Virus record (IMG/VR): IMGVR_UViG_3300046804_003469
Location: 151,028 to 215,027 of that record
Direction: 5' to 3' (one strand)
DNA length: 64,000 nt
Shown: piece by piece, positions 2,289 through 64,000 of the stretch
Layout of the letters: every line of letters starts with the position of its first letter
How positions within the stretch are numbered: position 1 is the stretch's first letter
The notes under the pieces: model-generated
Database searches by the model: none
What the model was told of the DNA's origin: nothing
The model's input: only the letters and a program-made list of their open reading frames with translations
Position numbers and translations under genes: made by a program

Positions 2289-4490
2289 ATGGCGACTCCT
2301 CAATTATCTCCAGGCGTACTCGTCAGAGAAGTTGATTTAACTGTAGGGAGAGCTGATAATGTATTAGAAAATGTTGGAGCAATTGCAGGTCCTTTCGCAC
2401 TTGGTCCAGTTAATGAGATTGTAAATATTACTACAGAACAAGAACTTATTAATACTTTTGGAAAACCACTTTCAACAGATTCCCAGTATGAGTATTGGAT
2501 GAGTGCATCCTCATACCTTTCTTACGGTGGTGTTCTTAAAGTAATCAGAACAGATAGTGCTAACTTAAATTGTGCAAATGCTGGCGTAAATACTGTTAGT
2601 AATGCATCAACTAAAATTAAAAATTATGATGATTATGTAGCAAACTGGTCTTCAACAAATTCAACATATATTTTTGCTGCTAAAAATCCAGGAACTTGGG
2701 GTAATGGATTAAAAGTTTGCATGATTGATGATCTTGCAGATCAAATTGTAGCAATTAACACTTCCAATCCAGGCAATGTTGGAGCAATTGTTGGATATGG
2801 AATGACTTATGCAATTACCAATACGGTGCTTGCTGGAATTGGAACTACTACTCCATTTACTGGTTATCTTAAAGCAATTGTTACTGGTGTAACAACAGAT
2901 ACACAAACTTCAAATAGTTTAGTTTCTGTTAAAATTGTTTCCAGAGTATCTTCTGGTGGAACAGAATATCCTGTATCTTATGCAGAAGGATTTGTTGGTG
3001 CTGCATTTAGTTCATATAGTTCAAACGTTAATTTTATTAACAATAGTGGTACTCTTGCTGGAACTGTTACACTTGGAATTGCTTCAGATTGGTATGGACA
3101 GCAAACTTTAGGACTGACAAATACAACAATTTATTGGAAATCAATTGCACCAAAGCCAATCTCAAATAGTTTTACATTAAATAGATCTGGAAAAAATGAT
3201 GGTCTTCATGTTGTAGTTGTTGATGATAGAGGATCTATAACTGGAGTTACTGGTAATATTTTAGAAAAGCATCTGTTCTTATCAAAATCAGCAGATTCTG
3301 TTTCAACCAGAAATTCACCACAAAGAAACTATTGGAAGGATTACTTAGCATTAAGTTCTGATTATCTCTATGCTGGTGATAATCCATCAGTTGGAGCAGA
3401 TACTTATTGGAACACACAATATCGTGCTACAGGTTTCTCAACTGCTTTCAATCCATATTCTGAATCTCAAGGTGCATGGAATCAAAATGCACAAGGAGTT
3501 ACTTTCAGTGCATTAGGAAATCTAACATATACATTATCTGGAGGAAAAGATTATTATGGAACTGATAATGTATCGAACGGAATGGTTGCAAAATTAGGTG
3601 ATTTATATACTTCATACGACTTATTTGCAAGCAAAGAAAATTCTAAGGTTGACTTCTTAATCATGGGTCCTGGACTTGATAATAAATCTGAATCTCAAGC
3701 AAAAGCAAATCATCTGATTGCAATTGCCGATGGAAGAAAAGATTGTGTTGCAGTTATTTCTCCACACAGATCAGATCTGGTAAATGTAACTAATGCAGAA
3801 ACACAAACAAATAATGTAATTCAGTTCTTTAGTCCACTTTCCTCATCCTCATATGCAGTATTTGATAGTGGATATAAGTATACTTATGATAGATTTAATA
3901 ACCTGTTTAGATATATCCCATGTAATGCGGATATTGCTGGATTAATGTGCAGAACTGGAATTCAAGCCTATCCTTGGTTCTCACCTGCTGGTCAACAGCG
4001 TGGAATTTTAAATAATGCAATTAAACTTGCATATAATCCAAACCAAGCACAAAGAGATAGACTTTATCCATTGAGAATTAATTCAGTTATAAATCAACCT
4101 GGAATTGGTATTTTACTCTTTGGAGATAAAACTGCTCTTGGATATGATTCGGCATTTGATAGAATTAATGTTAGAAGATTGTTCTTAACTGTTGAGCAAG
4201 CACTTCAAAAGTCTGCACAAGCACAACTGTTCGAATTAAATGATCAAATTACAAGAGCAAACTTCGTAAATATTGTTGAACCTTATTTACGTGATGTTCA
4301 AGCTAAGAGAGGATTATATGATTTCAGAGTGATCTGCGATGAGACTAACAACACTCCTGATATTATTGATAATAATGAGTTTAGAGCAGATATCTATCTC
4401 AAACCAGCTAAGTCTATCAACTATGTAACTATTACATTTGTTGCTACGAGAACTGGAGTCTCGTTCGAAGAAGTTGCTGGTAGAGTTTAA
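2289..4490 (+). CDS. gp18: Tail sheath protein
   Basis: SPGVLVREVDLT N-terminus, PWFSPAG, FDRINVRRLF; AGGAG RBS. Confidence 0.98.
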   Translation: MATPQLSPGVLVREVDLTVGRADNVLENVGAIAGPFALGPVNEIVNITTEQELINTFGKPLSTDSQYEYWMSASSYLSYGGVLKVIRTDSANLNCANAGVNTVSNASTKIKNYDDYVANWSSTNSTYIFAAKNPGTWGNGLKVCMIDDLADQIVAINTSNPGNVGAIVGYGMTYAITNTVLAGIGTTTPFTGYLKAIVTGVTTDTQTSNSLVSVKIVSRVSSGGTEYPVSYAEGFVGAAFSSYSSNVNFINNSGTLAGTVTLGIASDWYGQQTLGLTNTTIYWKSIAPKPISNSFTLNRSGKNDGLHVVVVDDRGSITGVTGNILEKHLFLSKSADSVSTRNSPQRNYWKDYLALSSDYLYAGDNPSVGADTYWNTQYRATGFSTAFNPYSESQGAWNQNAQGVTFSALGNLTYTLSGGKDYYGTDNVSNGMVAKLGDLYTSYDLFASKENSKVDFLIMGPGLDNKSESQAKANHLIAIADGRKDCVAVISPHRSDLVNVTNAETQTNNVIQFFSPLSSSSYAVFDSGYKYTYDRFNNLFRYIPCNADIAGLMCRTGIQAYPWFSPAGQQRGILNNAIKLAYNPNQAQRDRLYPLRINSVINQPGIGILLFGDKTALGYDSAFDRINVRRLFLTVEQALQKSAQAQLFELNDQITRANFVNIVEPYLRDVQAKRGLYDFRVICDETNNTPDIIDNNEFRADIYLKPAKSINYVTITFVATRTGVSFEEVAGRV

Positions 4491-4528
4491 TTTAACTAGA
4501 TTATTAATTACAAAAGGAGGATCCTAAA

Positions 4529-5143
4529 ATGGCAACAATTCCAGTAAGAAACCTTTCTCAATTTAAATCAAAGTTAATTGGTGGTGGTGCTCGTCCTAAT
4601 TTATTTGAAGTGAACGTAACTTTCCCAACAGGAGTTAATTTAGGAATTCAGGCTGATGGTGGTGGAACATTTAACACAGATAATTTTAGATTCCTGTGTA
4701 AGGCTGCCGCATTACCTGCATCAAACGTTGCTCCAATTGATGTCCCATTCAGAGGACGTATTTTAAAAGTTGCTGGAGACAGAACTTTTGATACTTGGAC
4801 TGTAACCGTTATTAATGATGAAAACTTCCAACATAGAAGAGCATTTGAAGCATGGATGCAAAACGTTGCTCAATATGCTGACCATGCTGGTTTAACTAAC
4901 CCAGCTAGTTACATGGGTAATGCTAATGTTTATCAACTTGGAAGAACTAGATCAAATACTCAAACTCAAAGCAGCACTTCTGGTAATGCTGCTATATTAG
5001 CACAATATAAATTCATTGATATTTTCCCAACTAATGTTTCTGCAATTGAACTTTCTTATGAAAGCACTGATACTATTGAAGAGTTTACTGTTGAGTTCCA
5101 AGTTCAATACTTCTATCCTGAAAGAGCAGGTTCTGGTGCTTGA
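4529..5143 (+). CDS. gp19: Tail tube protein
   Basis: GGARPNLFEV, FRGRILKVAGDRTFDTW, IEEFTVEFQ; follows sheath. Confidence 0.97.
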   Translation: MATIPVRNLSQFKSKLIGGGARPNLFEVNVTFPTGVNLGIQADGGGTFNTDNFRFLCKAAALPASNVAPIDVPFRGRILKVAGDRTFDTWTVTVINDENFQHRRAFEAWMQNVAQYADHAGLTNPASYMGNANVYQLGRTRSNTQTQSSTSGNAAILAQYKFIDIFPTNVSAIELSYESTDTIEEFTVEFQVQYFYPERAGSGA

Positions 5144-7039: not shown

Positions 7040-7360
7040 ATGAAATCTTTCAAGCAATTTATCTCAGAATCAGTTAATATTGCTGGCGATTTCACAGGAA
7101 ATCTTTATATCAACTCGCAACCAGATCAACCACAGCAAGTTGGTGAGGAATATGTTGCTGATGTAATGTGGAATGGAAGTTTATATAGGTTGGAATTAAC
7201 AACTAGAAACGGAATTCCAACAAAACAAGAACTTGGTGAGCAATTACAATCAACTTATCCTGGTGTAGTTGTTCATCAAATTTATCCAATGATGGAAAAG
7301 AATTTAAATATCAAAGATGTAAAAAGATACCACCCATCAAAATTAGAATGGATTGATTGA
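7040..7360 (+). CDS. Hypothetical protein with capsid-targeting-like N-terminus
   Basis: Starts MKSFKQFISE, resembling the T4 internal-protein signal MKTYQEFIAE; lies in the head cluster. Confidence 0.7.
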   Translation: MKSFKQFISESVNIAGDFTGNLYINSQPDQPQQVGEEYVADVMWNGSLYRLELTTRNGIPTKQELGEQLQSTYPGVVVHQIYPMMEKNLNIKDVKRYHPSKLEWID

Positions 7361-54040: not shown

Positions 54041-54527
54041 TGATATTGTTTTATTAATTACAGTATCAATTATTGATTTTCTTTATGAAAATTATCCAAT
54101 ACAAAGATTTTGGATTTTGGAAACAATTGCCAGAGCACCTTATTTTTCATTTTTAAGTGTTCTTCATTTGAGAGAATCATTAGGATTGCGTGGAGAAGAC
54201 CACTTATATCTTATGAAAGAACACTTTTCTCAGACTTTAAATGAAACTGAACATCTGGAATATATGGAAAGCATCGGTGGTGCTGATCGTTGGATTGATC
54301 GTTTATTTGCTTGGCACTTGGTTTTGGTCTATTACTGGATTATGGTTGGTTACTATCTCATTAATCCTGTGGATGCTTATCATTTAAATGCTGGTATTGA
54401 ACTACATGCAACTGAAACTTACCTTGATTATCTTTGGGACCATCCTGAGGATCAAAAGATTTCTGAGATTGCTGTAGATGAAATGAATCATTATATTGAA
54501 CTTACAAGAGCGATGGAGTTGATATGA
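54024..54527 (+). CDS. ptox: Plastoquinol terminal oxidase
   Basis: RFWILETIARAPYF, NETEHL, ELHATETY, DEMNH di-iron motifs. Confidence 0.93.
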   Translation: MMKKFNDIVLLITVSIIDFLYENYPIQRFWILETIARAPYFSFLSVLHLRESLGLRGEDHLYLMKEHFSQTLNETEHLEYMESIGGADRWIDRLFAWHLVLVYYWIMVGYYLINPVDAYHLNAGIELHATETYLDYLWDHPEDQKISEIAVDEMNHYIELTRAMELI

Positions 54528-55855
54528 AAGTGTTAGTTATATTTGGTGCGACAGGCGACCTATGCCGTAAAAAATTGATACCAGCACTCTATACTCTTCA
54601 TAAGAAAGGTCTTTTACCAAAAGGTCTGAAGATTATAGGTGCCTCTAGAACTCAACATACTAAGGAGAGTTGGGTTGAAGTTCTTGGCAGTTATTCCCAA
54701 GAGTTTATCAAGAGACTTGAATATGTTCCTTGTGACTTGAGTGATGCAGAGTCTCTTAAATCATTAGAATCCTCTGAAGATATGACTTATTTTCTTTCTG
54801 TACCACCAGAAAGATATGCCGATGCCGTTACAAATCTAAAAGAAGCAGGTAAGTTAGATGACGCAGAAAAATCTAGAGTCATTATTGAGAAACCTTTTGG
54901 CACCGATCTTCAATCTGCTAATTATTTACAATCTGTGGTTTCTGGATATCTACGCGAGAAACAAGTATATCGCATTGACCATTATCTCGGTAAAGATACT
55001 GTTAATAATATCCTTGCCACCCGCTTTAGCAATATACTTCTGGAGCCACTCTGGAACAGGAACTTCATAGAAGAAGTTCAGATCTTTGCAACTGAAACAA
55101 TCGGTTGTGAAGGTCGTGCTCAGTATTATGATACTGCTGGTGCTGTGAGAGATATGTTACAGAACCATATGCTTCAGGTGCTTGCTCTGATTGCAATGGA
55201 ACCACCTTGTAAGAATGATGCGAGGGAAATCCGTAGAGAGAAGGTTAAGGTTCTTGCTGCGACAAGACTTGGTGATAATGTAGTTCTTGGGCAATATGAT
55301 GGATACAAGAACGAGGATGGTGTAAAACCAGAATCACAGACACCAACCTTTGTTGCTGGTGAATTGTATGTTGATAATTGGAGATGGAAAGGTGTTCCTT
55401 TTTACTTTATGACTGGTAAGAAAATGCCTGTCAATTGTGTAGAAGTTGTGATTAAATTTAAGTCACCACCACAACAACTTTTTGATGGTCATGAGTGTAA
55501 TGACCGAATAGTAATGAGATTGCAACCAGATCCCCATCTGGATATGCGTATTGATATTAAGTCGCCTGGACTCAATGATATGGTAGAACCAGCACTTCTT
55601 CAGTATCATTATCCAGTAGAGAAAGCGATTGATGGTTATGTAAAACTCTTTTATGATGCAATCAATGAAGACCAGTCACACTTCGTCCACGCAGATGAAG
55701 TGTTGGAGTCCTGGAGAATTGTTGATGACCTCCTTTGTACTGGAGATTCTTGCCGTATTATGACGATGCCATATCTTTATAATGAAGGTATTTGGGGACC
55801 ACTAACTAAAACAGAACTTATTACAAAGTGGGACTATCCACTTAAACTCAAGTAG
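54524..55855 (+). CDS. zwf: Glucose-6-phosphate dehydrogenase
   Basis: GATGDL, EKPFG, RIDHYLGK, RDMLQNH, RWKGVPF. Confidence 0.98.
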   Translation: MKVLVIFGATGDLCRKKLIPALYTLHKKGLLPKGLKIIGASRTQHTKESWVEVLGSYSQEFIKRLEYVPCDLSDAESLKSLESSEDMTYFLSVPPERYADAVTNLKEAGKLDDAEKSRVIIEKPFGTDLQSANYLQSVVSGYLREKQVYRIDHYLGKDTVNNILATRFSNILLEPLWNRNFIEEVQIFATETIGCEGRAQYYDTAGAVRDMLQNHMLQVLALIAMEPPCKNDAREIRREKVKVLAATRLGDNVVLGQYDGYKNEDGVKPESQTPTFVAGELYVDNWRWKGVPFYFMTGKKMPVNCVEVVIKFKSPPQQLFDGHECNDRIVMRLQPDPHLDMRIDIKSPGLNDMVEPALLQYHYPVEKAIDGYVKLFYDAINEDQSHFVHADEVLESWRIVDDLLCTGDSCRIMTMPYLYNEGIWGPLTKTELITKWDYPLKLK

Positions 55856-55865
55856 GAGAGAAGAA

Positions 55866-56900
55866 ATGAAAGTAGGACTAATCGGACTGGGAAGAATGGG
55901 AGAAGGAATGTCTCGCCGTATGATGAAATCTGGAATCGAGGTCTGGGGTTATCGAAGGAGTTATGAAAAAGCAAATGAAGCATTTGAAAAAGGATATGTT
56001 AATGGAATTACAACTGATATTGAAAATCTTGTTAGAGTAGTTAAACAAAATAAAAATGGTGGAACGCAACCAGGAATTTTCCAAATGGTTGTTCCAGCAG
56101 AAACAGTAGAGGAGACAATCAATGAGTTACTACGATATTGTGGTGAAGGAGATATTATTATTGATCATGGCAATAGCAATTTTAAGGACAGTCGGAAAAG
56201 AGCAGAACGCCTGGCAAAACTTGGTATCCAATATATTGATTGTGGCACTAGCGGTGGTGTCTACGGTTTGGATCGTGGATACTGTCTTATGGTTGGTGGC
56301 GGAGATACTGCAGTCGCCACTTGTTCGCGCATTTTTAATGCCCTCGCTCCAGGAATTGACGCTGCCCCGAGGACTCAGTTTGACTCAGACATAACCTCTG
56401 CAGAGTATGGATGGTTGCATTGCGGTGGTCCTGGTGCTGGTCACTTTGTAAAGATGGTTCACAATGGAATCGAATATGGTATCATGCAGGCATACGCTGA
56501 AGGATTCAATATCATCAAGAATGCTAACAACGGAGCACAGTATGTCAGAGAAGGAGACGCAGAGGTTGCCCCTATGGCAGATCCAGAATCTTACTGCTAT
56601 GATATTGATGTTGCTGAGGTTGCTGAGTTATGGCGTCGTGGTAGCGTTGTTGGTTCTTGGTTACTTGATCTTACTGCTGATGTGCTTCGGGGCAATCGTG
56701 AGCTTAAACAATTCTCTGGTGGGGTATCAGACAGTGGTGAGGGTCGTTGGACTGTTTCTGCCGCTGTGGATTTGGGGATTCCCGCTCCTGTCATTACTAC
56801 TGCCTTATTTGAAAGATTTAACTCACGTAATCTTGGATCATTCGGAGCAAGAATTCTGAATGGTATGCGTTATATGTTCGGAGGACATCACGTAAGATAA
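55866..56900 (+). CDS. gnd: 6-phosphogluconate dehydrogenase (short form)
   Basis: GLGRMG, GHFVKMVHNGIEY, SGEGRWT, MRYMFGGH. Confidence 0.98.
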   Translation: MKVGLIGLGRMGEGMSRRMMKSGIEVWGYRRSYEKANEAFEKGYVNGITTDIENLVRVVKQNKNGGTQPGIFQMVVPAETVEETINELLRYCGEGDIIIDHGNSNFKDSRKRAERLAKLGIQYIDCGTSGGVYGLDRGYCLMVGGGDTAVATCSRIFNALAPGIDAAPRTQFDSDITSAEYGWLHCGGPGAGHFVKMVHNGIEYGIMQAYAEGFNIIKNANNGAQYVREGDAEVAPMADPESYCYDIDVAEVAELWRRGSVVGSWLLDLTADVLRGNRELKQFSGGVSDSGEGRWTVSAAVDLGIPAPVITTALFERFNSRNLGSFGARILNGMRYMFGGHHVR

Positions 56901-56904
56901 AAAA

Positions 56905-57048
56905 ATGGAATTTGTTTTTAGGTTTGTAGAATTTGTGCTAAATAATCCCACATCACTTTTTATAATTGGTGTGGGGTTGACAGTCGTTCCCACAATGGGT
57001 ATAATGTATGTACATTCAATAAAAGATGAGAAAAACAACGGGGCGTAG
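56905..57048 (+). CDS. Small membrane peptide whose stop codon lies inside tRNA-Pro
   Basis: Unannotated 47-aa ORF MEFVFRFVEFVLNNPTSLFIIGVGLTVVPTMGIMYVH...GA*. Confidence 0.6.
   Translation: MEFVFRFVEFVLNNPTSLFIIGVGLTVVPTMGIMYVHSIKDEKNNGA
56977..57005 (+). promoter_or_regulatory. Perfect-consensus sigma70 promoter for tRNA-Pro block
   Basis: TTGACA-17 nt-TATAAT. Confidence 0.85.
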
Positions 57049-57677: not shown

Positions 57678-57707
57678 TTGACAGAAACCCTGTCAAACCT
57701 GTATAAT
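57678..57707 (+). promoter_or_regulatory. Sigma70 promoter with inverted repeat over -35
   Basis: TTGACAG-AAACC-CTGTCAA; TTGACA-18 nt-TATAAT. Confidence 0.65.
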
Positions 57708-58358: not shown

Positions 58359-58394
58359 AAGTGGGTTGCATAAACCCACTTTTTTTATTATAAT
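58359..58394 (+). terminator. Terminator hairpin with embedded sigma70 promoter
   Basis: AAGTGGGTT-GCATA-AACCCACTT + T run; TTGCAT-17 nt-TATAAT. Confidence 0.75.
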
Positions 58395-58648: not shown

Positions 58649-59518
58649 ATGTATAAAGGTATTATTCTTGCTGGAGGGCAAGGGACAAGACTTTATCCTT
58701 CATCATTAGTTGTTTCTAAACAGTTGATGAATGTTTATGATAAACCTTTAATTTATTATCCAATAAGCACATTGATGATTGCTGGAATTAGAGAAATATT
58801 GATCATTACAAATTCATATGATTTGGATCAATATCAAAAACTTCTTGGAGATGGATCTCAATGGGGAATTTCTCTATCTTACCAAACTCAAGATAAACCC
58901 AATGGTATATGTGAAGCATTTATCATTGGGGAAAATTTTATAGGTGATGATAATGTATGTTTAATATTGGGTGATAACATTCTTTATGGGAATAATTTAG
59001 AATCGATATTGAAAGAATGTCAAAGAAAAAATGGGTCAACTATTCTTTCTTACCCAGTTAAAGATCCAGAAAGATTTGGTATAGTTGAATTTGAAGGAAA
59101 CACGGTTTATTCTATTGAAGAAAAACCAACCAATCCAAAATCAAATTCTGCAATTATCGGAATGTATTTTTTTGATAATAATGTGATTAATTATGCAAAG
59201 GAAGTGGTTCCTTCTCCAAGAGGAGAATTGGAAATAACTGATTTATTGGAAAAATATTTGCAACAAAAAAGTCTTAAAGTTAAGACTCTTCTTAGAGGAA
59301 TTACTTGGATTGATGCTGGAACATTTGATTCATTATTATTAGCATCAAATTTTATTTCAACTGTGGAAAAAATTCAATCATATAAAATTTCTTGTCCAGA
59401 AGAGATAGCATTTAGGAATAAATGGATTGATACAAATCAATTTAAATCTCTTGCAGAATCACTAATTAAAAGTGATTATGGGAAATATCTTTACACAATA
59501 TATCAACAAAATGTATGA
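58649..59518 (+). CDS. rfbA: Glucose-1-phosphate thymidylyltransferase
   Basis: GIILAGGQGTRLYP, SKQLMNVYDKP, LILGDN, RGELEITD, WIDAGT. Confidence 0.96.
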   Translation: MYKGIILAGGQGTRLYPSSLVVSKQLMNVYDKPLIYYPISTLMIAGIREILIITNSYDLDQYQKLLGDGSQWGISLSYQTQDKPNGICEAFIIGENFIGDDNVCLILGDNILYGNNLESILKECQRKNGSTILSYPVKDPERFGIVEFEGNTVYSIEEKPTNPKSNSAIIGMYFFDNNVINYAKEVVPSPRGELEITDLLEKYLQQKSLKVKTLLRGITWIDAGTFDSLLLASNFISTVEKIQSYKISCPEEIAFRNKWIDTNQFKSLAESLIKSDYGKYLYTIYQQNV

Positions 59519-60438
59519 CTATTTTAGTTACTGGAGGGGCAGGATTTATCGGAAGTAATTTTCTTCATCACTTAGTTTCTAATATGAATGAAGAAGTTAT
59601 TTGTATTGATAAATTAACTTATGCTTCTGATTGGAATAATATTCCAGATCCTGTTAAATTTTATACAACTGATATTGCTGATGAGCATAATTGTGAATAT
59701 GTTTTTAAGAAACATAAACCATCAACTGTGTTTCATTTTGCAGCAGAAACACATGTTGACAATTCAATTAAAGATTGTTCACAGTTTATACATACCAACA
59801 TTATTGGAACAGTTAATTTATTAAATCTTTCAGTAAAATATAACGTAGAGAAATTCATACATATTTCTACTGATGAAGTTTATGGATCTATTGATAAAGA
59901 TTATTTTACTGAGCAATCAAATTATAATCCTAAAAATCCTTATTCAGCATCTAAAGCATCTAGTGAGCATTTTGTAAATGCATTTAATAATACTTATGGA
60001 TTGCCAACAATTATTACAAACTGCTCTAATAATTATGGACCAAGACAACATACGGAAAAATTAATACCTCAAACAATAACAAACTTATTGTCTGGAAAAA
60101 AGGTTCCTGTATATGGTGATGGAAAACAAATAAGAGATTGGTTATACGTTCAAGATCATTGTGAAGCATTATTTGAAATTTTTCTCAACGGAAAAGTAGG
60201 AGAAAAATACAATATTGGTGGTGAATGTGAAATTAAAAATATAGATTTAATACGAATGATTCTTGATCGTATGAATATGAAGGAAAATATGATAGAATAT
60301 ATTGAAGATAGACCTGGACATGATCGTAGATATTCTACAGACATTACAAAAATCCGTCATGAATTAAAATGGTTTCCAAGATTTAACTTGGATGATGGAT
60401 TAGATAAAACAATTGCTTGGTACTCAAAACAACATTAA
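59515..60438 (+). CDS. rfbB: dTDP-glucose 4,6-dehydratase
   Basis: TGGAGFIG, AAETHVD, STDEVYG, YSASK, NCSNNYGP, DRPGHDRRY. Confidence 0.96.
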   Translation: MTILVTGGAGFIGSNFLHHLVSNMNEEVICIDKLTYASDWNNIPDPVKFYTTDIADEHNCEYVFKKHKPSTVFHFAAETHVDNSIKDCSQFIHTNIIGTVNLLNLSVKYNVEKFIHISTDEVYGSIDKDYFTEQSNYNPKNPYSASKASSEHFVNAFNNTYGLPTIITNCSNNYGPRQHTEKLIPQTITNLLSGKKVPVYGDGKQIRDWLYVQDHCEALFEIFLNGKVGEKYNIGGECEIKNIDLIRMILDRMNMKENMIEYIEDRPGHDRRYSTDITKIRHELKWFPRFNLDDGLDKTIAWYSKQH

Positions 60439-60448
60439 TTTTTCAATT

Positions 60449-62386
60449 ATGACTGATTTAAATTCTTCTTACATTGTATACAAACCTTGGGGTAAAGAGG
60501 TATGGTTAGAACTTAATGATAAGTATTGTTATAAAAGACTTTATATTAATTCTGGAACAAAAACTAGTTTTCAATATCATGAAAAAAAGTTAGAAACTAA
60601 TTTTATTATTGAAGGAACCGCCGAAGTTTGGTTGGAAAATGATGAAGGTGTTGTTGAGAAAAAAATAATGCACTCTGGTGAGTTTTTTACAGTTCAACCA
60701 CCAAGAAAACATAGAGTCATTGCAATTACAGACCTTATATTGCAGGAAGTATCTACTCCAGAAGTTGATGATGTGATTAGAATTTCAGATGATGCTTCTC
60801 GGGGTAATGGAAAAATTGAACATGAACATTTTAAACCAGCATTATGCATCTTGACTGCTGGAGTTGGAAAGAGGTTAGAAGATCTGTCGCAACATATTAA
60901 TAAGTGTTTATTACCTTTAGATAACAAAGCAATCATATCTCATATTATTGATAAGACTCCAAAAGAATATGAGATTGTTGTTGCTCTTGGATATAAAGGA
61001 GATATGGTTCAAGAGTATTGTGAAGCAGCACATCCAGATAGAACATTCAAATTTGTAAAGGTTGATAAGTATGTGGGTGAAGGATCTGGCCCTGCTTATT
61101 CAATTAGTAAGTGTAAAGAGCATTTACAGAGACCTTTTATATGGGTTACTGGAGATACAATTGTTACTAATGATCTTCCTCCCGTAAATGAAAACTGGTT
61201 AGGAATTTATCCAACAAGTATTCCTCAACTTTATTCTACTGTTAATATTGATAGTAATATCGACAGTGATACTGTTATTGGGTTTAAAAATAAAGATGAA
61301 AATGGATACGATTATGCATTTATTGGACTATCTGGTGTTTATGAATTTGAAAAATTCTGGGAACAACTTGATGTTGAAAGTGGTGAAATAGTTAGTGCAT
61401 ATTATGATATCAATCAATATTCTTCAATTAAAGCTAAAAAGTTTGATTGGTATGATGTAGGAACAATTGATAATTATTTGAGATCTCAAAAATTATTTGA
61501 AGATTCTAAACAGTATAGTATTCCTAAAACAAATGGAGAGTTTTTATATAAGTTAGAGAATCGTTTTATAAAATTATCTTCAGATGATAGTTTTATTAGT
61601 GGAAGAATAAAAAGGTCTGATGATTTGGATTCTTTAGTACCAAAATTAAATTACAAAGGAACACATTTATATTCTTATGAATGGGTTGATGGAGACACTC
61701 TTTATGATTGTAATAATACGAATGTTTGGAAAAGGTTTTTAGAATTTTCTAATCAAAAATTATGGGAAAGAGTGGATACTGATAGTACGTTTAATCAAAC
61801 GTGTAAAAAGTTTTACTATGATAAGTCTATTGATAGATTAAAATTGTTTTTAGATAGAAGAGATTCTTCATTTGCTGGAAACCATATTGTAAATGGTTTA
61901 CCAACAAAATCAATTTATGAGTTGTTAGAAAAATTTAATTGGGAAACTTTATATACTGGAATTCCAACAAAAATTTTCCACGGAGATCTTCAATTTGATA
62001 ATGTTGTTTATGGAAAAGATAACAAGTTTTATCTTTTAGATTGGAGACAAGATTTTGCTGGTAATAATATTGGTGATGTATACTATGATCTTTCCAAAAT
62101 GTATGGTGGCATATTGATGTCTTACAAATTAATGAAAGATGATAATAATTTTTCATGTTTCATTGACAACGAAATTGTAAATTATCAGTATACTACAAGT
62201 AATGAACTTGAAGAGTTTAAATATATTTACGAAGACTGGGTGATTAACAGTTGCTATGATTTGAATAAAGTAAAATCAATAACCTCTTTAATCTTTTTAA
62301 ATATGGCTGCTTTGCATGAAGAAGTGTTTGGAAATCTTTTATTCTTTAAATCCAAACAAATGTTGCAAGAACTAAATGATAAATAA
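60449..62386 (+). CDS. Tri-domain protein: cupin (type II M6P isomerase-like) + nucleotidyltransferase + choline/aminoglycoside-kinase-like domain
   Basis: KPWG...SFQYHEKKLET...H...EVSTPEVDDVIR; TAGVGKRL...NKCLLP...WYDVGT; HGDLQFDN...LLDWR...YYDLSK. Confidence 0.85.
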   Translation: MTDLNSSYIVYKPWGKEVWLELNDKYCYKRLYINSGTKTSFQYHEKKLETNFIIEGTAEVWLENDEGVVEKKIMHSGEFFTVQPPRKHRVIAITDLILQEVSTPEVDDVIRISDDASRGNGKIEHEHFKPALCILTAGVGKRLEDLSQHINKCLLPLDNKAIISHIIDKTPKEYEIVVALGYKGDMVQEYCEAAHPDRTFKFVKVDKYVGEGSGPAYSISKCKEHLQRPFIWVTGDTIVTNDLPPVNENWLGIYPTSIPQLYSTVNIDSNIDSDTVIGFKNKDENGYDYAFIGLSGVYEFEKFWEQLDVESGEIVSAYYDINQYSSIKAKKFDWYDVGTIDNYLRSQKLFEDSKQYSIPKTNGEFLYKLENRFIKLSSDDSFISGRIKRSDDLDSLVPKLNYKGTHLYSYEWVDGDTLYDCNNTNVWKRFLEFSNQKLWERVDTDSTFNQTCKKFYYDKSIDRLKLFLDRRDSSFAGNHIVNGLPTKSIYELLEKFNWETLYTGIPTKIFHGDLQFDNVVYGKDNKFYLLDWRQDFAGNNIGDVYYDLSKMYGGILMSYKLMKDDNNFSCFIDNEIVNYQYTTSNELEEFKYIYEDWVINSCYDLNKVKSITSLIFLNMAALHEEVFGNLLFFKSKQMLQELNDK

Positions 62387-63008
62387 GGACACAAAAATAT
62401 ATTGCTCATTTTCTTCAAATCCAGGAAACAATGGATGTATATTTTTTAATAATGCTTTTACTGAAAAAAATATAAATGCCATTTATAAGTCCTTTCACTC
62501 TAATGACATTCAAAAATCAATAGATGCGGTTAGGACTTTGAATATTTCTGGATTTGCAATTAGTATGCCATTTAAAGTAGAATGTTTGCGATATTTGGAT
62601 CAAATTACTGATGAGGTAAATGAAATAGGAGCATGTAACACGGTTATAAATGAAAATGGTAATCTTATTGGATATAATACTGATTACTTTGGAGTTAAAA
62701 CTTACATTGAACAATTAAACCTTAATATTAATTTTCTTTATATACTTGGTAATGGTGGGTTTAGTAAATCAATACAGTATGCATGTAAGTTATTAAATTT
62801 AAAATATGAAGTAATTGATAGGAAAAATTGGGATAAGATAAAACACTTAAAAAATCAATGGTTATTTAATGCAACTCCTATTGATATTGATACTGAAAAT
62901 AAAATAATAGATGGAAGACCATTTACTCAAGAAGGAAAACAGATAGCACTAAATCAAGCTATAAGACAATTTAAACTGTACACTGGAATTGATTATGAAA
63001 TCAGATAG
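62376..63008 (+). CDS. Shikimate-dehydrogenase-like protein (SdhL subfamily-like)
   Basis: SMPFK, NTV, NTDY, GNGG, NATP; MINKDT...PGNNG N-terminus in place of AroE SxSP. Confidence 0.85.
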   Translation: MINKDTKIYCSFSSNPGNNGCIFFNNAFTEKNINAIYKSFHSNDIQKSIDAVRTLNISGFAISMPFKVECLRYLDQITDEVNEIGACNTVINENGNLIGYNTDYFGVKTYIEQLNLNINFLYILGNGGFSKSIQYACKLLNLKYEVIDRKNWDKIKHLKNQWLFNATPIDIDTENKIIDGRPFTQEGKQIALNQAIRQFKLYTGIDYEIR

Positions 63009-64000
63009 ACCTTTAAATGAAATAAAATTTTTCATTGGTCCAATGAGTAAAAATGTTGTGGATTCTGTGATAGAGTTTTCGAACAAATATGGAAACAAGA
63101 TAGGATTCATACCATCAAGAAGACAACTTGATTACTCTGGAGGTTATGTTAATAACTGGTGTACAGAAAATTTTTGCAATTACGTCAGAAAAAATAATTC
63201 AAATATTCTTATATGTAGAGATCATGGTGGAGAAAATCAAGGGCAAAAAATTGATGATGGAATGCAATCATTTATTGTAGATTGTCAACATTTAGATTTA
63301 ATTCATGTAGATCCTTTTAGAGTATCTGAAGATATAAAACAAGCAGCGGAGAAAACAAAAACTATAATACAAAAATTATTTAAAATTAATCCAACTGTAA
63401 TGTATGAAGTTGGAACTGAAGAGGCAATATTTAAATACAGTCCTGAAGATTTGAAATGGTTTCTTGATTATTTGAAAAATGGTTTAACGATTAATCAATT
63501 CAATCAAATTAAATATGCAGTTGTTCAATCTGGAACTGGATTGAATCTTTCTACCAGAACTAACACGGGTAAGTTTAATAAAACTAAATTAAAGAGTTTT
63601 ATTGATGTTGTTAAAAAATTTAATTTGATGAGTAAAGAACATAATGGTGATTACTTAATTGATTCTTTTGATATTGAAACTAGATTTGAATTGGGATTAG
63701 ATGCAATTAATATTGCTCCAGAATTTGGACAAATAGAATCTGAATATTATTTGGAAGCATGTAAAAAAGACAAAACTTTGTTTGACACGTTATATAAAAT
63801 ATGTTACAATTCTGGGAAATGGAAAAAATGGATACGTGATATTGAAATAATAAGAAAAGATCAATTGATCATGACATGTTGCCATTATGTTTTATCTGAT
63901 AAAGAGTTCTTAGAAAATATAAAATCTAAATTTCCAGAATCAGACAAAATGATATGTGAAAAAATAAACACAAAATTAAGATTTCTATATGAACAAACAA
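62995..64000 (+). CDS. GatZ/KbaZ-like (tagatose-6-P epimerase/aldolase-associated) TIM-barrel protein, runs off window end
   Basis: Not in ORF track; open frame with SRRQLD..GGY, RDHGG, IHVDP, YEVGTEE, VVQSG, KEHNGDY, NIAPEFG. Confidence 0.8.
   Translation, partial: MKSDRPLNEIKFFIGPMSKNVVDSVIEFSNKYGNKIGFIPSRRQLDYSGGYVNNWCTENFCNYVRKNNSNILICRDHGGENQGQKIDDGMQSFIVDCQHLDLIHVDPFRVSEDIKQAAEKTKTIIQKLFKINPTVMYEVGTEEAIFKYSPEDLKWFLDYLKNGLTINQFNQIKYAVVQSGTGLNLSTRTNTGKFNKTKLKSFIDVVKKFNLMSKEHNGDYLIDSFDIETRFELGLDAINIAPEFGQIESEYYLEACKKDKTLFDTLYKICYNSGKWKKWIRDIEIIRKDQLIMTCCHYVLSDKEFLENIKSKFPESDKMICEKINTKLRFLYEQT

What the first reader, a model, noticed from the sequence alone, without database searches (positions are those of the whole stretch)
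60449..64000. Unusual sugar-nucleotide pathway: cupin-NTase-kinase fusion + SdhL-like dehydrogenase + GatZ-like enzyme
Seen: after rfbA and rfbB (no rfbC/rfbD follows within the window) come three overlapping genes: a tri-domain isomerase/nucleotidyltransferase/kinase, a shikimate-dehydrogenase-fold protein, and a GatZ/KbaZ-like protein missing from the ORF track. The dehydrogenase N-terminus (MINKDT...S..PGN.G...IYKSF...SMPFK) matches my recollection of the SdhL/HI0607 subfamily, whose natural substrate is unknown. No other aro genes are present. Inference: not aromatic biosynthesis but a route making an activated rare sugar, polyol or cyclitol for virion, DNA or host-surface glycosylation; this context may reveal the SdhL substrate.
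Basis: partly seen in the sequence, partly recalled or inferred. Interest (0 to 1): 0.66.

Follow-up and report, generated by a model that had tools for sequence, protein, structure and literature searches.

The report
Phage module for activating a rare sugar
A T4-like cyanophage carries a tightly packed gene set (a fused isomerase/nucleotidyltransferase/kinase, a miniature SdhL-type dehydrogenase, a compact GatZ-type enzyme and a small phosphatase) that most likely builds a nucleotide-activated rare sugar of unknown identity. The same set recurs in many uncultured marine viruses and in several bacterial phyla.

Summary
Window 60449-64000 holds three overlapping + strand genes:
- a 645-aa cupin / sugar-1-P nucleotidyltransferase / APH-ChoK-type kinase fusion;
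- a 210-aa shikimate-dehydrogenase-fold protein closest to the orphan SdhL class (HI0607);
- a 340-aa compact GatZ/KbaZ-like protein, cut 5 aa short by the window end, that keeps GatZ's proposed Asp/His/Glu/His site.

The window is the end of a 215-kb T4-like cyanomyovirus record. A twin contig shows the cluster continues with a 124-aa HAD phosphatase, more sugar-nucleotide enzymes and glycosyltransferases.

The genes belong together:
- cupin, NTase-kinase and HAD accompany the compact GatZ-like gene in about 75 of 80 viral loci;
- one protein fuses NTase, kinase and GatZ-like;
- Bdellovibrionota, Planctomycetota and Verrucomicrobiota MAG loci carry HAD, GatZ-like, cupin, NTase-kinase and a full-length SDH-like gene in another order.

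The SDH-like gene is an optional add-on (20 of 80 loci). Its slot is elsewhere empty or holds a methyltransferase. Some variants add GmhA-like isomerase and split transketolase.

Best reading: de novo synthesis of an NDP-activated rare heptose or hexose by isomerase, kinase, phosphatase and NTase logic, as for GDP-heptose and GDP-octose, with GatZ-like and SdhL-like tailoring. Product and target are unknown.

The parts
58649..59518 (+). rfbA/rmlA, glucose-1-phosphate thymidylyltransferase (289 aa). It sits in the same operon-like run but probably feeds a separate dTDP-sugar branch.
   Evidence: TIGR01207 418.6 bits against a cut-off of 360.65; PF00483 E 1e-65.
59515..60438 (+). rfbB/rmlB, dTDP-glucose 4,6-dehydratase (307 aa).
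   Evidence: TIGR01181 420.6 bits against a cut-off of 365.1. It overlaps rfbA by 4 nt.
60449..62386 (+). Tri-domain gene of 645 aa from the ATG: cupin (type II PMI-like), sugar-1-phosphate nucleotidyltransferase, and APH/ChoK-type small-molecule kinase.
   Evidence: Same gene call on the twin contig. Pfam and NCBIfam. Relatives of 628-646 aa in many loci.
60461..60796 (+). Cupin domain (residues 17-128 counted from the TTG at 60413). Proposed ketose-phosphate/aldose-phosphate isomerase, or an epimerase.
   Evidence: PF01050 31.2 bits against a cut-off of 23.6. It aligns to the PMI end of TIGR01479, positions 354-465 of 467. The free-standing homologue in L003 hits PF01050 at E 1e-29.
60833..61507 (+). 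Nucleotidyltransferase domain (residues 141-365).
   Evidence: PF00483 29.3 bits against a cut-off of 21.2. A family profile hits Glc-1-P thymidylyltransferase 3HL3 at E 5e-13 along its full length, then LicC, ST0452 and HddC-type proteins. The Gly/Gly/Arg/Lys positions of the N-terminal nucleotide-binding loop are invariant or nearly so.
61508..62383 (+). Kinase domain (residues 366-657), APH/choline-kinase fold.
   Evidence: AF2 pLDDT 94.7. VIA Z 16.2 to LicA, about 15 to APH(4)-Ia and choline kinases, about 14 to FN3K. MtnK and ethanolamine kinase are among the Foldseek hits. His-Gly-Asp, Asn and the downstream Asp are invariant in 27 sequences. Relatives pass Pfam APH cut-offs.
62376..63008 (+). 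Miniature SdhL-like shikimate-dehydrogenase-fold oxidoreductase (210 aa). It is an optional accessory of the module.
   Evidence: HI0607 E 5.7e-31. NF009202 is the best NCBIfam model but scores below its cut-off. Lys67, Asp103, the Gly-rich loop and Arg149 are kept, while two Rossmann-domain segments are deleted. A 39-sequence short-form clade is sister to true SdhL. More than 1000 relatives of 202-215 aa.
62995..64000 (+). Compact GatZ/KbaZ-like class II aldolase-fold enzyme (340 aa in full; the last 5 codons lie beyond the window end). Proposed ketose-phosphate C4-epimerase or aldolase.
   Evidence: The residues equivalent to GatZ Asp87, His88, Glu171 and His257 are Asp76, His77, Glu142 and His216, invariant or at least 90% conserved.

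Best explanation
The three genes are part of a mobile biosynthetic module carried by a T4-like cyanomyovirus. The module also includes a 124-aa HAD phosphatase that starts just past the window end. It makes a nucleotide-activated rare sugar from a central ketose phosphate.

Proposed route (all steps inferred):
1. The compact GatZ-like enzyme remodels a ketose phosphate at C3-C4. This would be a Zn-dependent retro-aldol/aldol reaction, that is, C4 epimerisation or aldol formation. Examples are fructose-6-P to tagatose-6-P, or the equivalent on sedoheptulose-7-P.
2. The PMI-type cupin converts the ketose phosphate to the aldose phosphate.
3. The APH/ChoK-type kinase phosphorylates the sugar, most simply at the anomeric position.
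4. The HAD phosphatase removes the distal phosphate. Steps 3 and 4 could run in either order. Together they replace a phosphomutase.
5. The nucleotidyltransferase domain makes the NDP-sugar.
6. The SdhL-like mini-dehydrogenase performs an NAD(P)(H)-dependent keto reduction or oxidation on a ring-form sugar intermediate, giving a modified product in those modules that carry it.

Downstream glycosyltransferases (two GT11) and a methyltransferase would use the products. rfbA and rfbB feed a separate dTDP-6-deoxy-aminosugar branch.

Shown: the identities of the folds and domains, the conserved catalytic residues, and the gene linkage.
Inferred: every chemical step, the substrate, the nucleotide and the glycan target.
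For: Fold and family assignments.

Catalytic residues kept:
- GatZ Asp87/His88/Glu171/His257 (as proposed in PMC11907403) map to Asp76/His77/Glu142/His216, invariant or at least 90% conserved in 50 sequences.
- The kinase His-Gly-Asp...Asn...Asp positions are invariant.
- SDH Lys67 and Asp103 are invariant.
- The HAD protein weakly matches the capsule-biosynthesis phosphatase model TIGR01689.

Linkage:
- Of 80 viral loci anchored on the GatZ-like gene, 78 have the NTase-kinase within 6 kb, on the same strand, and 76 have the HAD protein.
- 20 of the 80 have the SDH-like gene. In the loci inspected it lies between the fusion and the GatZ-like gene.
- P0386 fuses NTase, APH and GatZ_KbaZ in a single 897-aa protein.
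- MAG loci assigned to Bdellovibrionota, Planctomycetota and Verrucomicrobiota, and an unclassified deltaproteobacterial MAG, carry GatZ-like (387-501 aa), cupin, NTase-kinase and a full-length SDH-like gene (257-289 aa), with the cupin fused to the NTase-kinase in one of them. A HAD gene upstream was confirmed in the two loci that were scanned.

Heptose hint:
- 15 SDH-anchored viral loci carry HAD, cupin, NTase-kinase, a GmhA-like SIS protein (best PDB match 5I01, E 2.7e-20), a split transketolase and the SDH-like gene.
- One locus (L206) has all of these plus the GatZ-like gene.
- In cultured phage S-CAM1 the cupin homologue sits among genes annotated as heptose genes.

Precedent for the logic: the lincomycin octose route has a transaldolase, isomerase, kinase, phosphatase and guanylyltransferase (PMC4351081). 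The GDP-heptose route GmhA/HddA/GmhB/HddC is from my own knowledge. GatZ and KbaZ are reported to act as F6P/T6P C4-epimerases (PMC11907403).
Against: - No step has biochemical support here.
- The kinase fold does not discriminate sugar kinases from choline kinases: LicA is nominally the top match, and Z values are tied within about 2 units.
- P0003 itself fails the Pfam GatZ model, is 80 aa shorter than GatZ, and lacks GatZ's Glu44 equivalent.
- The SDH-like protein lacks about 50-60 residues of the Rossmann domain, so cofactor binding is unproven.
- In variants with a GmhA-like isomerase the cupin persists, so it may be an epimerase rather than the isomerase.
- Marine Flavobacteriaceae carry the compact GatZ-like gene alone in a housekeeping context, so it does not need the module.
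- No RNA run was listed, so expression is unknown.
- The SDH-anchored loci were ascertained by the SDH gene, so their proportions are biased.
Confidence: 0.55

Rival explanations
1. NDP-alditol route. The SDH-like enzyme reduces the C2 keto group of the ketose phosphate made by the GatZ-like enzyme, in the manner of TarJ. Alternatively it reduces an NDP-ketose, as in the CDP-glucitol and CDP-arabinitol routes. The NTase then yields an NDP-polyol for a teichoic-acid-like or capsule-like polymer.
For: Pairing of an NTase with a reductase is the hallmark of CDP-ribitol, CDP-arabinitol and CDP-glucitol synthesis (own knowledge). The SDH family includes a ketohexose reductase, 5-ketofructose reductase 7COK, which appears among the PDB hits. 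The SDH-like gene is immediately adjacent to the GatZ-like gene in the viral loci inspected.
Against: Most modules (about 58 of 80) lack the SDH-like gene yet keep the cupin, kinase and phosphatase, which an NDP-alditol route does not need. The kinase and HAD phosphatase have no role in the known alditol routes.
Confidence: 0.15
2. LicC/LicA-like activation of a phospho-alcohol. The kinase phosphorylates choline, ethanolamine or a similar alcohol and the NTase makes the CDP-alcohol, which decorates a glycan. The neighbouring sugar enzymes would be only loosely related.
For: Pneumococcal LicA is nominally the top structural match of the kinase (Z 16.2). LicC is the second-best PDB hit of the NTase profile (E 6e-11). 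NTase-then-kinase fusions of LicC and LicA are known (own knowledge).
Against: The Z values of LicA, APH(4), FN3K and glucosamine kinase are tied within about 2 units. The best full-length NTase hit is a sugar-1-P thymidylyltransferase. The kinase-NTase is fused to a PMI-type cupin here, fused to a GatZ-like domain in P0386, and persistently linked to HAD, GmhA-like and transketolase genes. All of these are sugar-phosphate enzymes.
Confidence: 0.1
3. Unrelated neighbours. The three genes are independent cargo of a hypervariable cyanophage island, and the SDH-like gene is a degenerate aroE-type auxiliary metabolic gene for aromatic biosynthesis.
For: The region is a mosaic island whose flanks differ between relatives. 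The SDH-like protein is truncated. JGI annotates its relatives as shikimate dehydrogenase.
Against: The short form is conserved at 202-230 aa in over 1000 relatives. In the loci inspected it sits in the same slot, overlapping its neighbours. Full-length relatives sit in the same operon in four bacterial lineages. It groups with SdhL and not with AroE or YdiB. No aro genes were found. The AroE Ser14/Ser16 motif is replaced, and the segment that holds AroE Tyr215 is deleted (the residue roles are from my own knowledge).
Confidence: 0.04
4. The GatZ-like protein is a non-catalytic chaperone or subunit, as E. coli GatZ and KbaZ are annotated, that stabilises a class II aldolase.
For: RefSeq names E. 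coli GatZ a putative aldolase chaperone.
Against: No GatY/KbaY-type partner was found among the cluster genes scanned. The proposed catalytic and metal residues are conserved. GatZ and KbaZ themselves are reported to epimerise F6P and T6P (PMC11907403). The compact form stands alone in flavobacterial core genomes.
Confidence: 0.05

Closest known systems
GDP-D-glycero-alpha-D-manno-heptose pathway (GmhA, HddA, GmhB, HddC)
   Same: The same four-step logic: ketose-P to aldose-P isomerase, anomeric kinase, HAD phosphatase that removes the distal phosphate, and sugar-1-P nucleotidyltransferase. Some module variants carry a true GmhA-like SIS protein. The NTase profile hits HddC-type proteins at E 1.4e-8.
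   Different: The isomerase is a cupin rather than SIS in this phage. The kinase has the APH/ChoK fold rather than GHMP. Kinase, NTase and cupin are fused. The GatZ-like and SdhL-like enzymes are extra. The substrate is unknown.
Lincomycin GDP-octose pathway (LmbR transaldolase, LmbN isomerase, LmbP kinase, LmbK phosphatase, LmbO guanylyltransferase; PMC4351081)
   Same: An enzyme that acts on a C-C bond of a ketose phosphate feeds an isomerase, kinase, phosphatase and NTase series. The GatZ-like enzyme, or in some variants a split transketolase, is proposed to take the place of LmbR.
   Different: The enzyme families differ throughout. The setting is a phage or cell-surface glycan, not an antibiotic cluster. 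No octose evidence.
GatZ/KbaZ (PF08013), reported fructose-6-P/tagatose-6-P C4-epimerases of galactitol and GalNAc catabolism (PMC11907403)
   Same: Fold: TM 0.70-0.75 to 2FIQ. Profile similarity: E 1e-10, hhalign 97%. All four proposed active-site residues are kept.
   Different: 340 aa against 420 aa. No Pfam hit for the protein itself. The Glu44 equivalent is lost. The context is biosynthetic, with no PTS, GatY or KbaY. The compact group has 846 representatives at the 50% identity level.
SdhL / HI0607 (PDB 1NPY; NCBIfam NF009202), orphan class of shikimate-dehydrogenase-like proteins
   Same: Best solved and best NCBIfam match. The first six residues are identical to HI0607, and the catalytic Lys67 and Asp103 sit at the same positions. 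The short forms are the sister clade in the tree.
   Different: 210 aa against about 271 aa, with two deletions in the NAD(P) domain. The score (136.6 bits) is far below the equivalog cut-off of 306. The gene is always embedded in a sugar-nucleotide module. True enterobacterial SdhL instead sits next to ketose PTS genes.
LicC/LicA and AmgK/MurU-type kinase plus nucleotidyltransferase pairs
   Same: An APH/ChoK-fold small-molecule kinase works with an NTP-transferase-fold enzyme to activate a substrate in two steps. LicA and LicC are among the top structural and sequence matches.
   Different: Here the two are fused with a PMI-type cupin and linked to ketose-phosphate enzymes and a phosphatase. 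That points to de novo synthesis rather than salvage.
Cyanophage 'mannose-6-phosphate isomerase' auxiliary metabolic genes (S-SCSM1 ORF118; PMC9602691)
   Same: Monofunctional type II PMI cupins, reported there as abundant and diverse in marine viromes. They probably correspond to the free-standing cupins of the SDH-less module variant; this equivalence was not tested directly.
   Different: That paper reads them as central-carbon genes. Here the cupin is part of, or fused into, an NDP-sugar module. No cultured phage in the collection searched carries the NTase-kinase.

Membership tests
SdhL class of shikimate dehydrogenases (NF009202 / HI0607) | Closer to SdhL than to the AroE or YdiB classes by sequence | tested here: met
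   HI0607 111 bits against 78 bits for the next class. NF009202 136.6 bits against 109.3 for the next model.
SdhL class of shikimate dehydrogenases (NF009202 / HI0607) | Reaches the curated equivalog score of 306 bits over the full 272-position model | tested here: not met
   136.6 bits, matching model positions 4-169 only. A true Salmonella SdhL scores 489 bits.
SdhL class of shikimate dehydrogenases (NF009202 / HI0607) | Catalytic Lys/Asp dyad (Lys67 shown to be critical in the H. influenzae enzyme, PMC2789096) | tested here: met
   Lys67 and Asp103 are invariant across 11 aligned sequences (for the Lys67 role).
SdhL class of shikimate dehydrogenases (NF009202 / HI0607) | Complete two-domain architecture with an intact Rossmann NAD(P) domain | tested here: not met
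   Two segments, together about 50-60 residues, are missing after Arg149 and after the Asn-Ala-Thr-Pro motif. The Gly-rich loop and Arg149 are kept.
SdhL class of shikimate dehydrogenases (NF009202 / HI0607) | Phylogenetic placement with SdhL, apart from AroE and YdiB | tested here: met
   Quick ML tree. The AroE and YdiB references are split off (SH-aLRT 99). The short viral clade (support 100) is sister to true SdhL (support 89). Limits: only one reference each for AroE, YdiB and SdhL, no RifI or Ael1, and the careful search did not finish.
SdhL class of shikimate dehydrogenases (NF009202 / HI0607) | Weak shikimate and no quinate oxidation in vitro | not testable with these tools
   Needs an enzyme assay.
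GatZ/KbaZ-like (PF08013) | Passes the Pfam gathering score | tested here: not met
   No Pfam or NCBIfam hit for P0003 or P0006. A fused family member, P0386, passes at 32.5 bits against a cut-off of 26.7.
GatZ/KbaZ-like (PF08013) | Class II aldolase TIM-barrel fold closest to GatZ structures | tested here: met
   AF2 pLDDT 96.1. 2FIQ and 3TXV are the top matches (E about 1e-12, TM 0.70-0.75), followed by class II FBAs. Profile against 2FIQ: E 1e-10.
GatZ/KbaZ-like (PF08013) | Asp87, His88, Glu171 and His257 (metal and catalytic set proposed in PMC11907403) | tested here: met
   They align to Asp76, His77, Glu142 and His216. Asp76 is invariant and the other three are at least 90% conserved in 50 sequences.
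GatZ/KbaZ-like (PF08013) | About 420 aa and a catabolic PTS / GatY-KbaY context | tested here: not met
   340 aa, in a biosynthetic glycan cluster. Canonical forms of about 415-445 aa from Firmicutes MAGs and isolates carry none of the module genes nearby, and a Listeria homologue lies among PTS-sized ORFs.
Sugar-1-phosphate nucleotidyltransferase (PF00483) | Pfam score above the cut-off and the N-terminal Gly-x-Gly-x-Arg nucleotide loop | tested here: met
   29.3 bits against a cut-off of 21.2. Gly10, Gly12, Arg14 and Lys24 of the domain are invariant or nearly so. 3HL3 E 5e-13.
APH / choline-kinase-type small-molecule kinases (PF01636) | Pfam score above the cut-off | tested here: not met
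   15.0 bits against a cut-off of 23.2 for the window's own domain. Relatives pass: P0386 at 28.8 bits and L041 at 25.6 bits.
APH / choline-kinase-type small-molecule kinases (PF01636) | Bilobal kinase fold with a catalytic His-x-Asp...Asn loop and a downstream metal-binding Asp | tested here: met
   VIA Z 14-16 over 200-255 aligned residues to LicA, APH(4), ChoK and FN3K. His158, Gly159, Asp160, Asn165 and Asp178 are invariant.
Type II phosphomannose-isomerase cupin (PF01050) | Pfam score above the cut-off, matching the PMI end of bifunctional GMP/PMI | tested here: met
   31.2 bits against a cut-off of 23.6. TIGR01479 positions 354-465 of 467.
Heptose/octose-type NDP-sugar route (isomerase, kinase, phosphatase, NTase) | All four activities are encoded together and co-inherited | tested here: met
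Heptose/octose-type NDP-sugar route (isomerase, kinase, phosphatase, NTase) | Demonstrated bisphosphate or 1-phosphate intermediates and an NDP-sugar product | not testable with these tools
   Needs in vitro reconstitution.

The most novel reading that the evidence does not exclude
The module makes a so far undescribed nucleotide-activated sugar. One candidate is a talo- or galacto-configured hexose; another is a C4-epimerised heptose derived from fructose-6-P or sedoheptulose-7-P. It would use a GatZ-type C4-epimerase or aldolase in a biosynthetic role for the first time. The SdhL-type enzymes would be ketoreductases of ketose-derived sugars, free, phosphorylated or NDP-linked. That would give the orphan SdhL class its natural substrate class. 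It would also reinterpret the abundant cyanophage 'MPI' genes as parts of a glycan-precursor pathway rather than central-carbon genes.
Probability: 0.3. Interest if true: 0.8.

Novelty: new variant of a known kind. Interest (0 to 1): 0.66.

Why it matters
- The module is common. The GatZ-like protein has more than 5500 relatives and the mini-SDH more than 1000 in the word search. Published work reports the cupin 'MPI' type in marine viromes at frequencies similar to psbA.
- Its product is unknown, and no cultured phage in the collection searched carries it.
- It links two enzyme families with open questions to a concrete, testable pathway: SdhL, which has no known natural substrate, and GatZ/KbaZ, which is argued to be either a chaperone or an epimerase.
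- It shows a non-homologous re-invention of the isomerase, kinase, phosphatase and nucleotidyltransferase logic used for heptoses and octoses.
- It suggests that cyanophages synthesise unusual glycan precursors during infection. That bears on cell-surface remodelling, superinfection exclusion and grazing recognition in the ocean's dominant phototrophs.
- The natural mosaics (with or without SDH-like, methyltransferase, GmhA-like isomerase and transketolase) offer a ready-made set of comparisons for assigning each step.

Tried and rejected
- Direct family scans of the GatZ-like protein (Pfam, NCBIfam) and a single-sequence PDB search gave nothing usable. The only weak hit was an SGNH esterase at E 0.006, judged spurious. 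It took a family profile and a fold to place the protein.
- The single-sequence PDB search of the whole fusion gave only a marginal RmlA hit.
- The search for related loci failed twice: with the 50-sequence alignment (no conserved stretch) and with the single SDH-like protein (3 loci only). Smaller or tighter alignments worked.
- I first read the 307-aa protein upstream of the SDH-like gene in the GatZ-less variant as a divergent GatZ-like protein. hhalign rejected this (probability 0.3%). It is the C-terminal half of a split transketolase.
- I then read SIS plus transketolase as a replacement for the GatZ-like gene. This was softened, because one locus (L206) carries all of them in a row, and six others carry the GatZ-like gene plus more distant, weaker transketolase-like genes.
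- The Listeria 'phage' hits to the GatZ-like protein lie on records flagged UNVERIFIED_ORG. The gene is a canonical 422-aa form among PTS-sized ORFs that I did not scan, so I took them for bacterial DNA and the hits as uninformative for the module.
- Expression: no RNA run was listed.
- The SDH tree is the quick version; the careful search did not finish in 300 s.
- The promoter and terminator scan showed nothing above the shuffled expectation (42 sites against 41.6). Apart from that there were two perfect sigma-70-like sites upstream at 56977 and 57678, and a terminator-like hairpin at 58359-58381.
- The 2005 SdhL structure paper could not be read. Statements about its kinetics rest on my own knowledge.
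The mini-SDH was therefore not folded, and the genes beyond base 7107 at the start of the contig were not annotated.

Full report
**What is there.** The window is the last 64 kb of a 215,027-bp IMG/VR virus record. PHROGs identifies the following:
- T4-type tail sheath, portal and major head protein;
- gp43-type DNA polymerase;
- a UvsW-like helicase;
- a gp46 (SbcC)-like nuclease;
- ribonucleotide reductase.

The major head protein is 83% identical to those of Synechococcus phages RN05-S and S-B43. The virus is therefore an uncultured T4-like cyanomyovirus.

After a terminator-like hairpin at 58359-58381, a run of + strand genes without internal terminators begins:
- rfbA, 58649-59518;
- rfbB, 59515-60438;
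- the tri-domain gene, 60449-62386;
- the SDH-like gene, 62376-63008;
- the GatZ-like gene, from 62995.

The last three overlap by 11 and 14 nt.

**The cluster continues past the window end.** A twin of this genome exists as a 215,197-bp JGI contig. Alignment shows that the window end and the start of the record are separated by only 35 bp of that contig. The cluster therefore runs across the record's ends.

The GatZ-like protein is 340 aa, so the window lacks 5 codons. It is followed by these genes:
- a 124-aa HAD phosphatase (weak match to the capsule-biosynthesis phosphatase model TIGR01689);
- an SDR epimerase or reductase;
- a truncated NDP-sugar dehydrogenase;
- another SDR;
- a WbuC-type cupin;
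- a hexapeptide acetyltransferase;
- a 201-aa DegT-like protein;
- two GT11 glycosyltransferases;
- an FkbM methyltransferase.

The cupin, acetyltransferase and DegT-like genes look like the finishing enzymes of a dTDP-amino-6-deoxyhexose branch. That would explain rfbA and rfbB without rfbC and rfbD. This is inference.

**The three proteins.**

(i) The fusion.
- Cupin: it passes PF01050 and Cupin_2 and aligns to the PMI end of bifunctional GMP/PMI.
- NTase: the domain passes PF00483. A 30-sequence profile hits a Glc-1-P thymidylyltransferase along its full length (E 5e-13), then LicC, ST0452 and HddC-type proteins.
- Kinase: the C-terminal 292 residues fail Pfam APH on their own (15 bits). 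They nevertheless fold with pLDDT 94.7 into an APH/choline-kinase fold. Z is 16.2 to LicA, about 15 to APH(4)-Ia and choline kinases, and about 14 to FN3K and glucosamine kinase. MtnK is among the Foldseek hits. The catalytic-loop His-Gly-Asp, the Asn and the metal-binding Asp are invariant.
- The fold does not tell sugar from choline.

(ii) The SDH-like protein.
- It is closest to HI0607/SdhL (E 5.7e-31; the first six residues are identical to HI0607).
- It keeps Lys67, Asp103, the Gly-rich loop, Arg149 and the Asn-Ala-Thr-Pro motif.
- It lacks two Rossmann-domain segments, one of which in AroE carries Tyr215. AroE's Ser14/Ser16 carboxylate-binding motif is also replaced (the residue roles are from my own knowledge).
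- The short form is not an accident. More than 1000 relatives of 202-215 aa exist.
- In a quick ML tree the short forms make one clade (support 100). That clade is sister to true SdhL (support 89) and well apart from the AroE and YdiB references (support 99).

(iii) The GatZ-like protein.
- It has no family hit by itself.
- A 50-sequence profile finds E. coli GatZ (E 1e-10), a Sinorhizobium homologue and KbaY. hhalign gives 97% probability.
- The AF2 model (pLDDT 96.1) matches GatZ structures best (TM 0.70-0.75), then class II aldolases.
- The four residues proposed as GatZ's zinc and catalytic set (PMC11907403) map to Asp76, His77, Glu142 and His216. These are invariant or nearly invariant.

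**Do the genes belong together?** Yes.
- Among 80 viral loci fetched with the GatZ-like protein, 78 carry the NTase-kinase within 6 kb, on the same strand, and 76 carry the small HAD phosphatase.
- 55 of the 80 have a free-standing 113-143-aa cupin and no SDH-like gene. 20 have the SDH-like gene.
- In all 16 complete loci with the SDH-like gene the cupin is fused to the NTase-kinase (628-642 aa), and in the loci inspected the SDH-like gene sits between the fusion and the GatZ-like gene.
- In other relatives that slot is empty (Marine virus AG-345-E15). In 14-16 loci it holds a TylF-type methyltransferase.
- A Rosetta-stone protein, P0386 (897 aa), fuses NTase, APH and GatZ_KbaZ. Other GatZ-like proteins are fused to methyltransferase or GFO/IDH/MocA oxidoreductase domains.
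- MAG loci assigned to Bdellovibrionota, Planctomycetota and Verrucomicrobiota, and an unclassified deltaproteobacterial MAG, carry a long GatZ-like gene (387-501 aa), a cupin, an NTase-kinase and a full-length SDH-like gene (257-289 aa). The order differs from the viral one, and in one locus the cupin is fused to the NTase-kinase.
- In the two loci that were scanned (L041, L042), a 186-192-aa HAD gene precedes the GatZ-like gene.
- These bacterial SDH-likes fall on the SdhL side of the tree. Their best NCBIfam model is NF009202 in two cases and NF001319, narrowly ahead of NF009202, in the other two.

**A further variant points to heptose.**
- Loci fetched with the SDH-like protein include 15 with this order: HAD, cupin (about 158 aa), NTase-kinase, a 210-aa SIS protein, a split transketolase (255 + 307 aa) and the SDH-like gene. 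No GatZ-like gene is present in these loci.
- The SIS protein's best solved relatives are all phosphoheptose isomerases (GmhA; 5I01, E 2.7e-20).
- One locus (L206) carries the whole set, ending with transketolase, SDH-like and GatZ-like genes in a row.
- SDH-like proteins from GatZ-containing and GatZ-less variants interleave in the tree. They are therefore the same enzyme in different mosaics.
- In cultured phage S-CAM1 the cupin homologue lies among genes annotated as carbohydrate kinase, phosphoheptose isomerase and heptose 6-epimerase.
- These loci were ascertained through the SDH gene, so their proportions are not population frequencies.

**Mechanism.** The recurrent set is isomerase, kinase, HAD phosphatase and nucleotidyltransferase. 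This is the logic by which cells make NDP-heptoses (GmhA/HddA/GmhB/HddC; own knowledge). The same logic gives the lincomycin GDP-octose, where a transaldolase first builds the ketose phosphate (PMC4351081). I therefore read the module as a de novo route from a central ketose phosphate to an NDP-activated rare sugar:
- The GatZ-like enzyme alters the ketose phosphate at C3-C4. This is either epimerisation, as reported for GatZ and KbaZ on F6P and T6P, or aldol chemistry.
- The cupin isomerises ketose-P to aldose-P.
- Kinase and phosphatase together move the phosphate to C1.
- The NTase activates the sugar.
- The SdhL-like enzyme is an optional redox tailoring step on a ring-form sugar.

An SDH-family 5-ketofructose reductase exists (7COK). 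True SdhL genes sit beside ketose PTS genes in Salmonella and, reportedly, E. coli ST648. Both observations make a keto-sugar substrate plausible, but they are only circumstantial. Every chemical step is inferred. The sugar (hexose or heptose), the nucleotide and the acceptor glycan are unknown.

**Rivals.**
- An NDP-alditol route, with the SDH-like enzyme as a TarJ-type reductase, does not explain the kinase and phosphatase or the many SDH-less modules.
- A LicC/LicA-like phospho-alcohol route rests on fold matches that are tied. It ignores the fusion to, and linkage with, sugar-phosphate enzymes.
- 'Unrelated neighbours' or a degenerate aroE is contradicted by conservation, position, fusions and phylogeny.
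- A non-catalytic GatZ 'chaperone' is unlikely. The active-site residues are conserved, no GatY or KbaY was found, and the compact form stands alone next to succinate dehydrogenase genes in marine Flavobacteriaceae chromosomes.

**Novelty and limits.**
- Cyanophage 'LPS' clusters and cyanophage type II MPI genes are on record (PMC1079782, PMC9602691).
- I found no paper that describes this module, the compact GatZ-like group or viral SdhL-like genes. The library searched is incomplete.
- In the phage collection searched, only one record, an uncultured single-cell-derived virus, carries a full-length relative of the fusion.
- It is best classed as a new variant of a known kind of pathway, built from unexpected enzyme families.

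Noticed in passing
window 63990-64000 and G000:C1:1-40 (L002); twin contig L004:7007-7041: The IMG/VR record is a rotated copy of a 215,197-bp JGI contig. 35 bp are missing at the junction of its ends, and there is 1 mismatch in about 6 kb. The glycan cluster, including the GatZ-like stop codon and the HAD start, spans the record's ends, although the record is labelled 'linear'.
   Followed up: yes
L004:8491-9279 and L004:11140-11745 (= L002:1450-2238 and 4099-4704): Two more 'miniaturised' enzymes sit in the same cluster. One is an NDP-sugar dehydrogenase of 262 aa without the C-terminal UDP-binding domain. The other is a DegT-like protein of only 201 aa, against a usual length of about 360. 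Together with the 210-aa SDH-like and 340-aa GatZ-like proteins, this suggests systematic domain trimming in this phage island.
   Followed up: partly
L016-L032, L047 (for example L020:7995-8972): Marine Flavobacteriaceae/Bacteroidota genomes, on contigs up to 1.1 Mb, carry the compact GatZ-like gene (44-50% identical) alone. Among the loci I inspected, two share the same synteny, and the neighbours scanned in L020 are succinate dehydrogenase, a tRNA-synthetase gene and an M24 peptidase. None of the module partners is present, and its role there is unknown.
   Followed up: partly
L175:5989-6807 (Salmonella Infantis contig deposited in the phage collection): A true SdhL (NF009202, 489 bits) lies immediately upstream of a fructose-type PTS EIIBC gene. 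A paper reports E. coli ST648 sdhL directly upstream of the L-sorbose operon (PMC12817954). Both hint that genuine SdhL enzymes act in ketohexose metabolism.
   Followed up: partly
L211:2694-7509, L215, L221, L198, L206: A viral module variant adds a GmhA-like SIS isomerase and a split transketolase between the NTase-kinase and the SDH-like gene. In L211, the one locus scanned, a PhyH-type dioxygenase and a class I/II aminotransferase follow. A phage-encoded split transketolase is unusual in itself.
   Followed up: partly
P0270, P0283, P0313, P0262, P0269, P0272 (representative-search hits): Compact GatZ-like domains occur fused to a GFO/IDH/MocA-type oxidoreductase domain, to methyltransferase domains, and in unannotated proteins of 600-1390 aa.
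   Followed up: partly
window 54524-56900: Two genes lie just upstream of the glycan island. One encodes a 443-aa 'dehydrogenase' (phrog_4941, E 4e-233). The other encodes a 344-aa protein of the same length as the 6PGD gene on a related contig (L006). They are probably the cyanophage pentose-phosphate genes zwf and gnd, which would supply NADPH and sugar phosphates.
   Followed up: no
window 56977-57005 and 57678-57707: Two perfect 12-of-12 sigma-70-type promoter matches on the + strand lie in the short-ORF region between gnd and rfbA. The overall promoter count in the region is at chance level.
   Followed up: no
OR846727.1, OR846732.1, OR845930.1 and AFYI01000003.1 in the phage collection: Several records filed as Listeria, Escherichia or Salmonella 'phage' look like bacterial chromosomal DNA, and one is openly a Salmonella genome contig. 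They carry a GatZ-type gene among PTS-sized ORFs, or SdhL-type genes, and they produce misleading 'phage' hits.
   Followed up: partly
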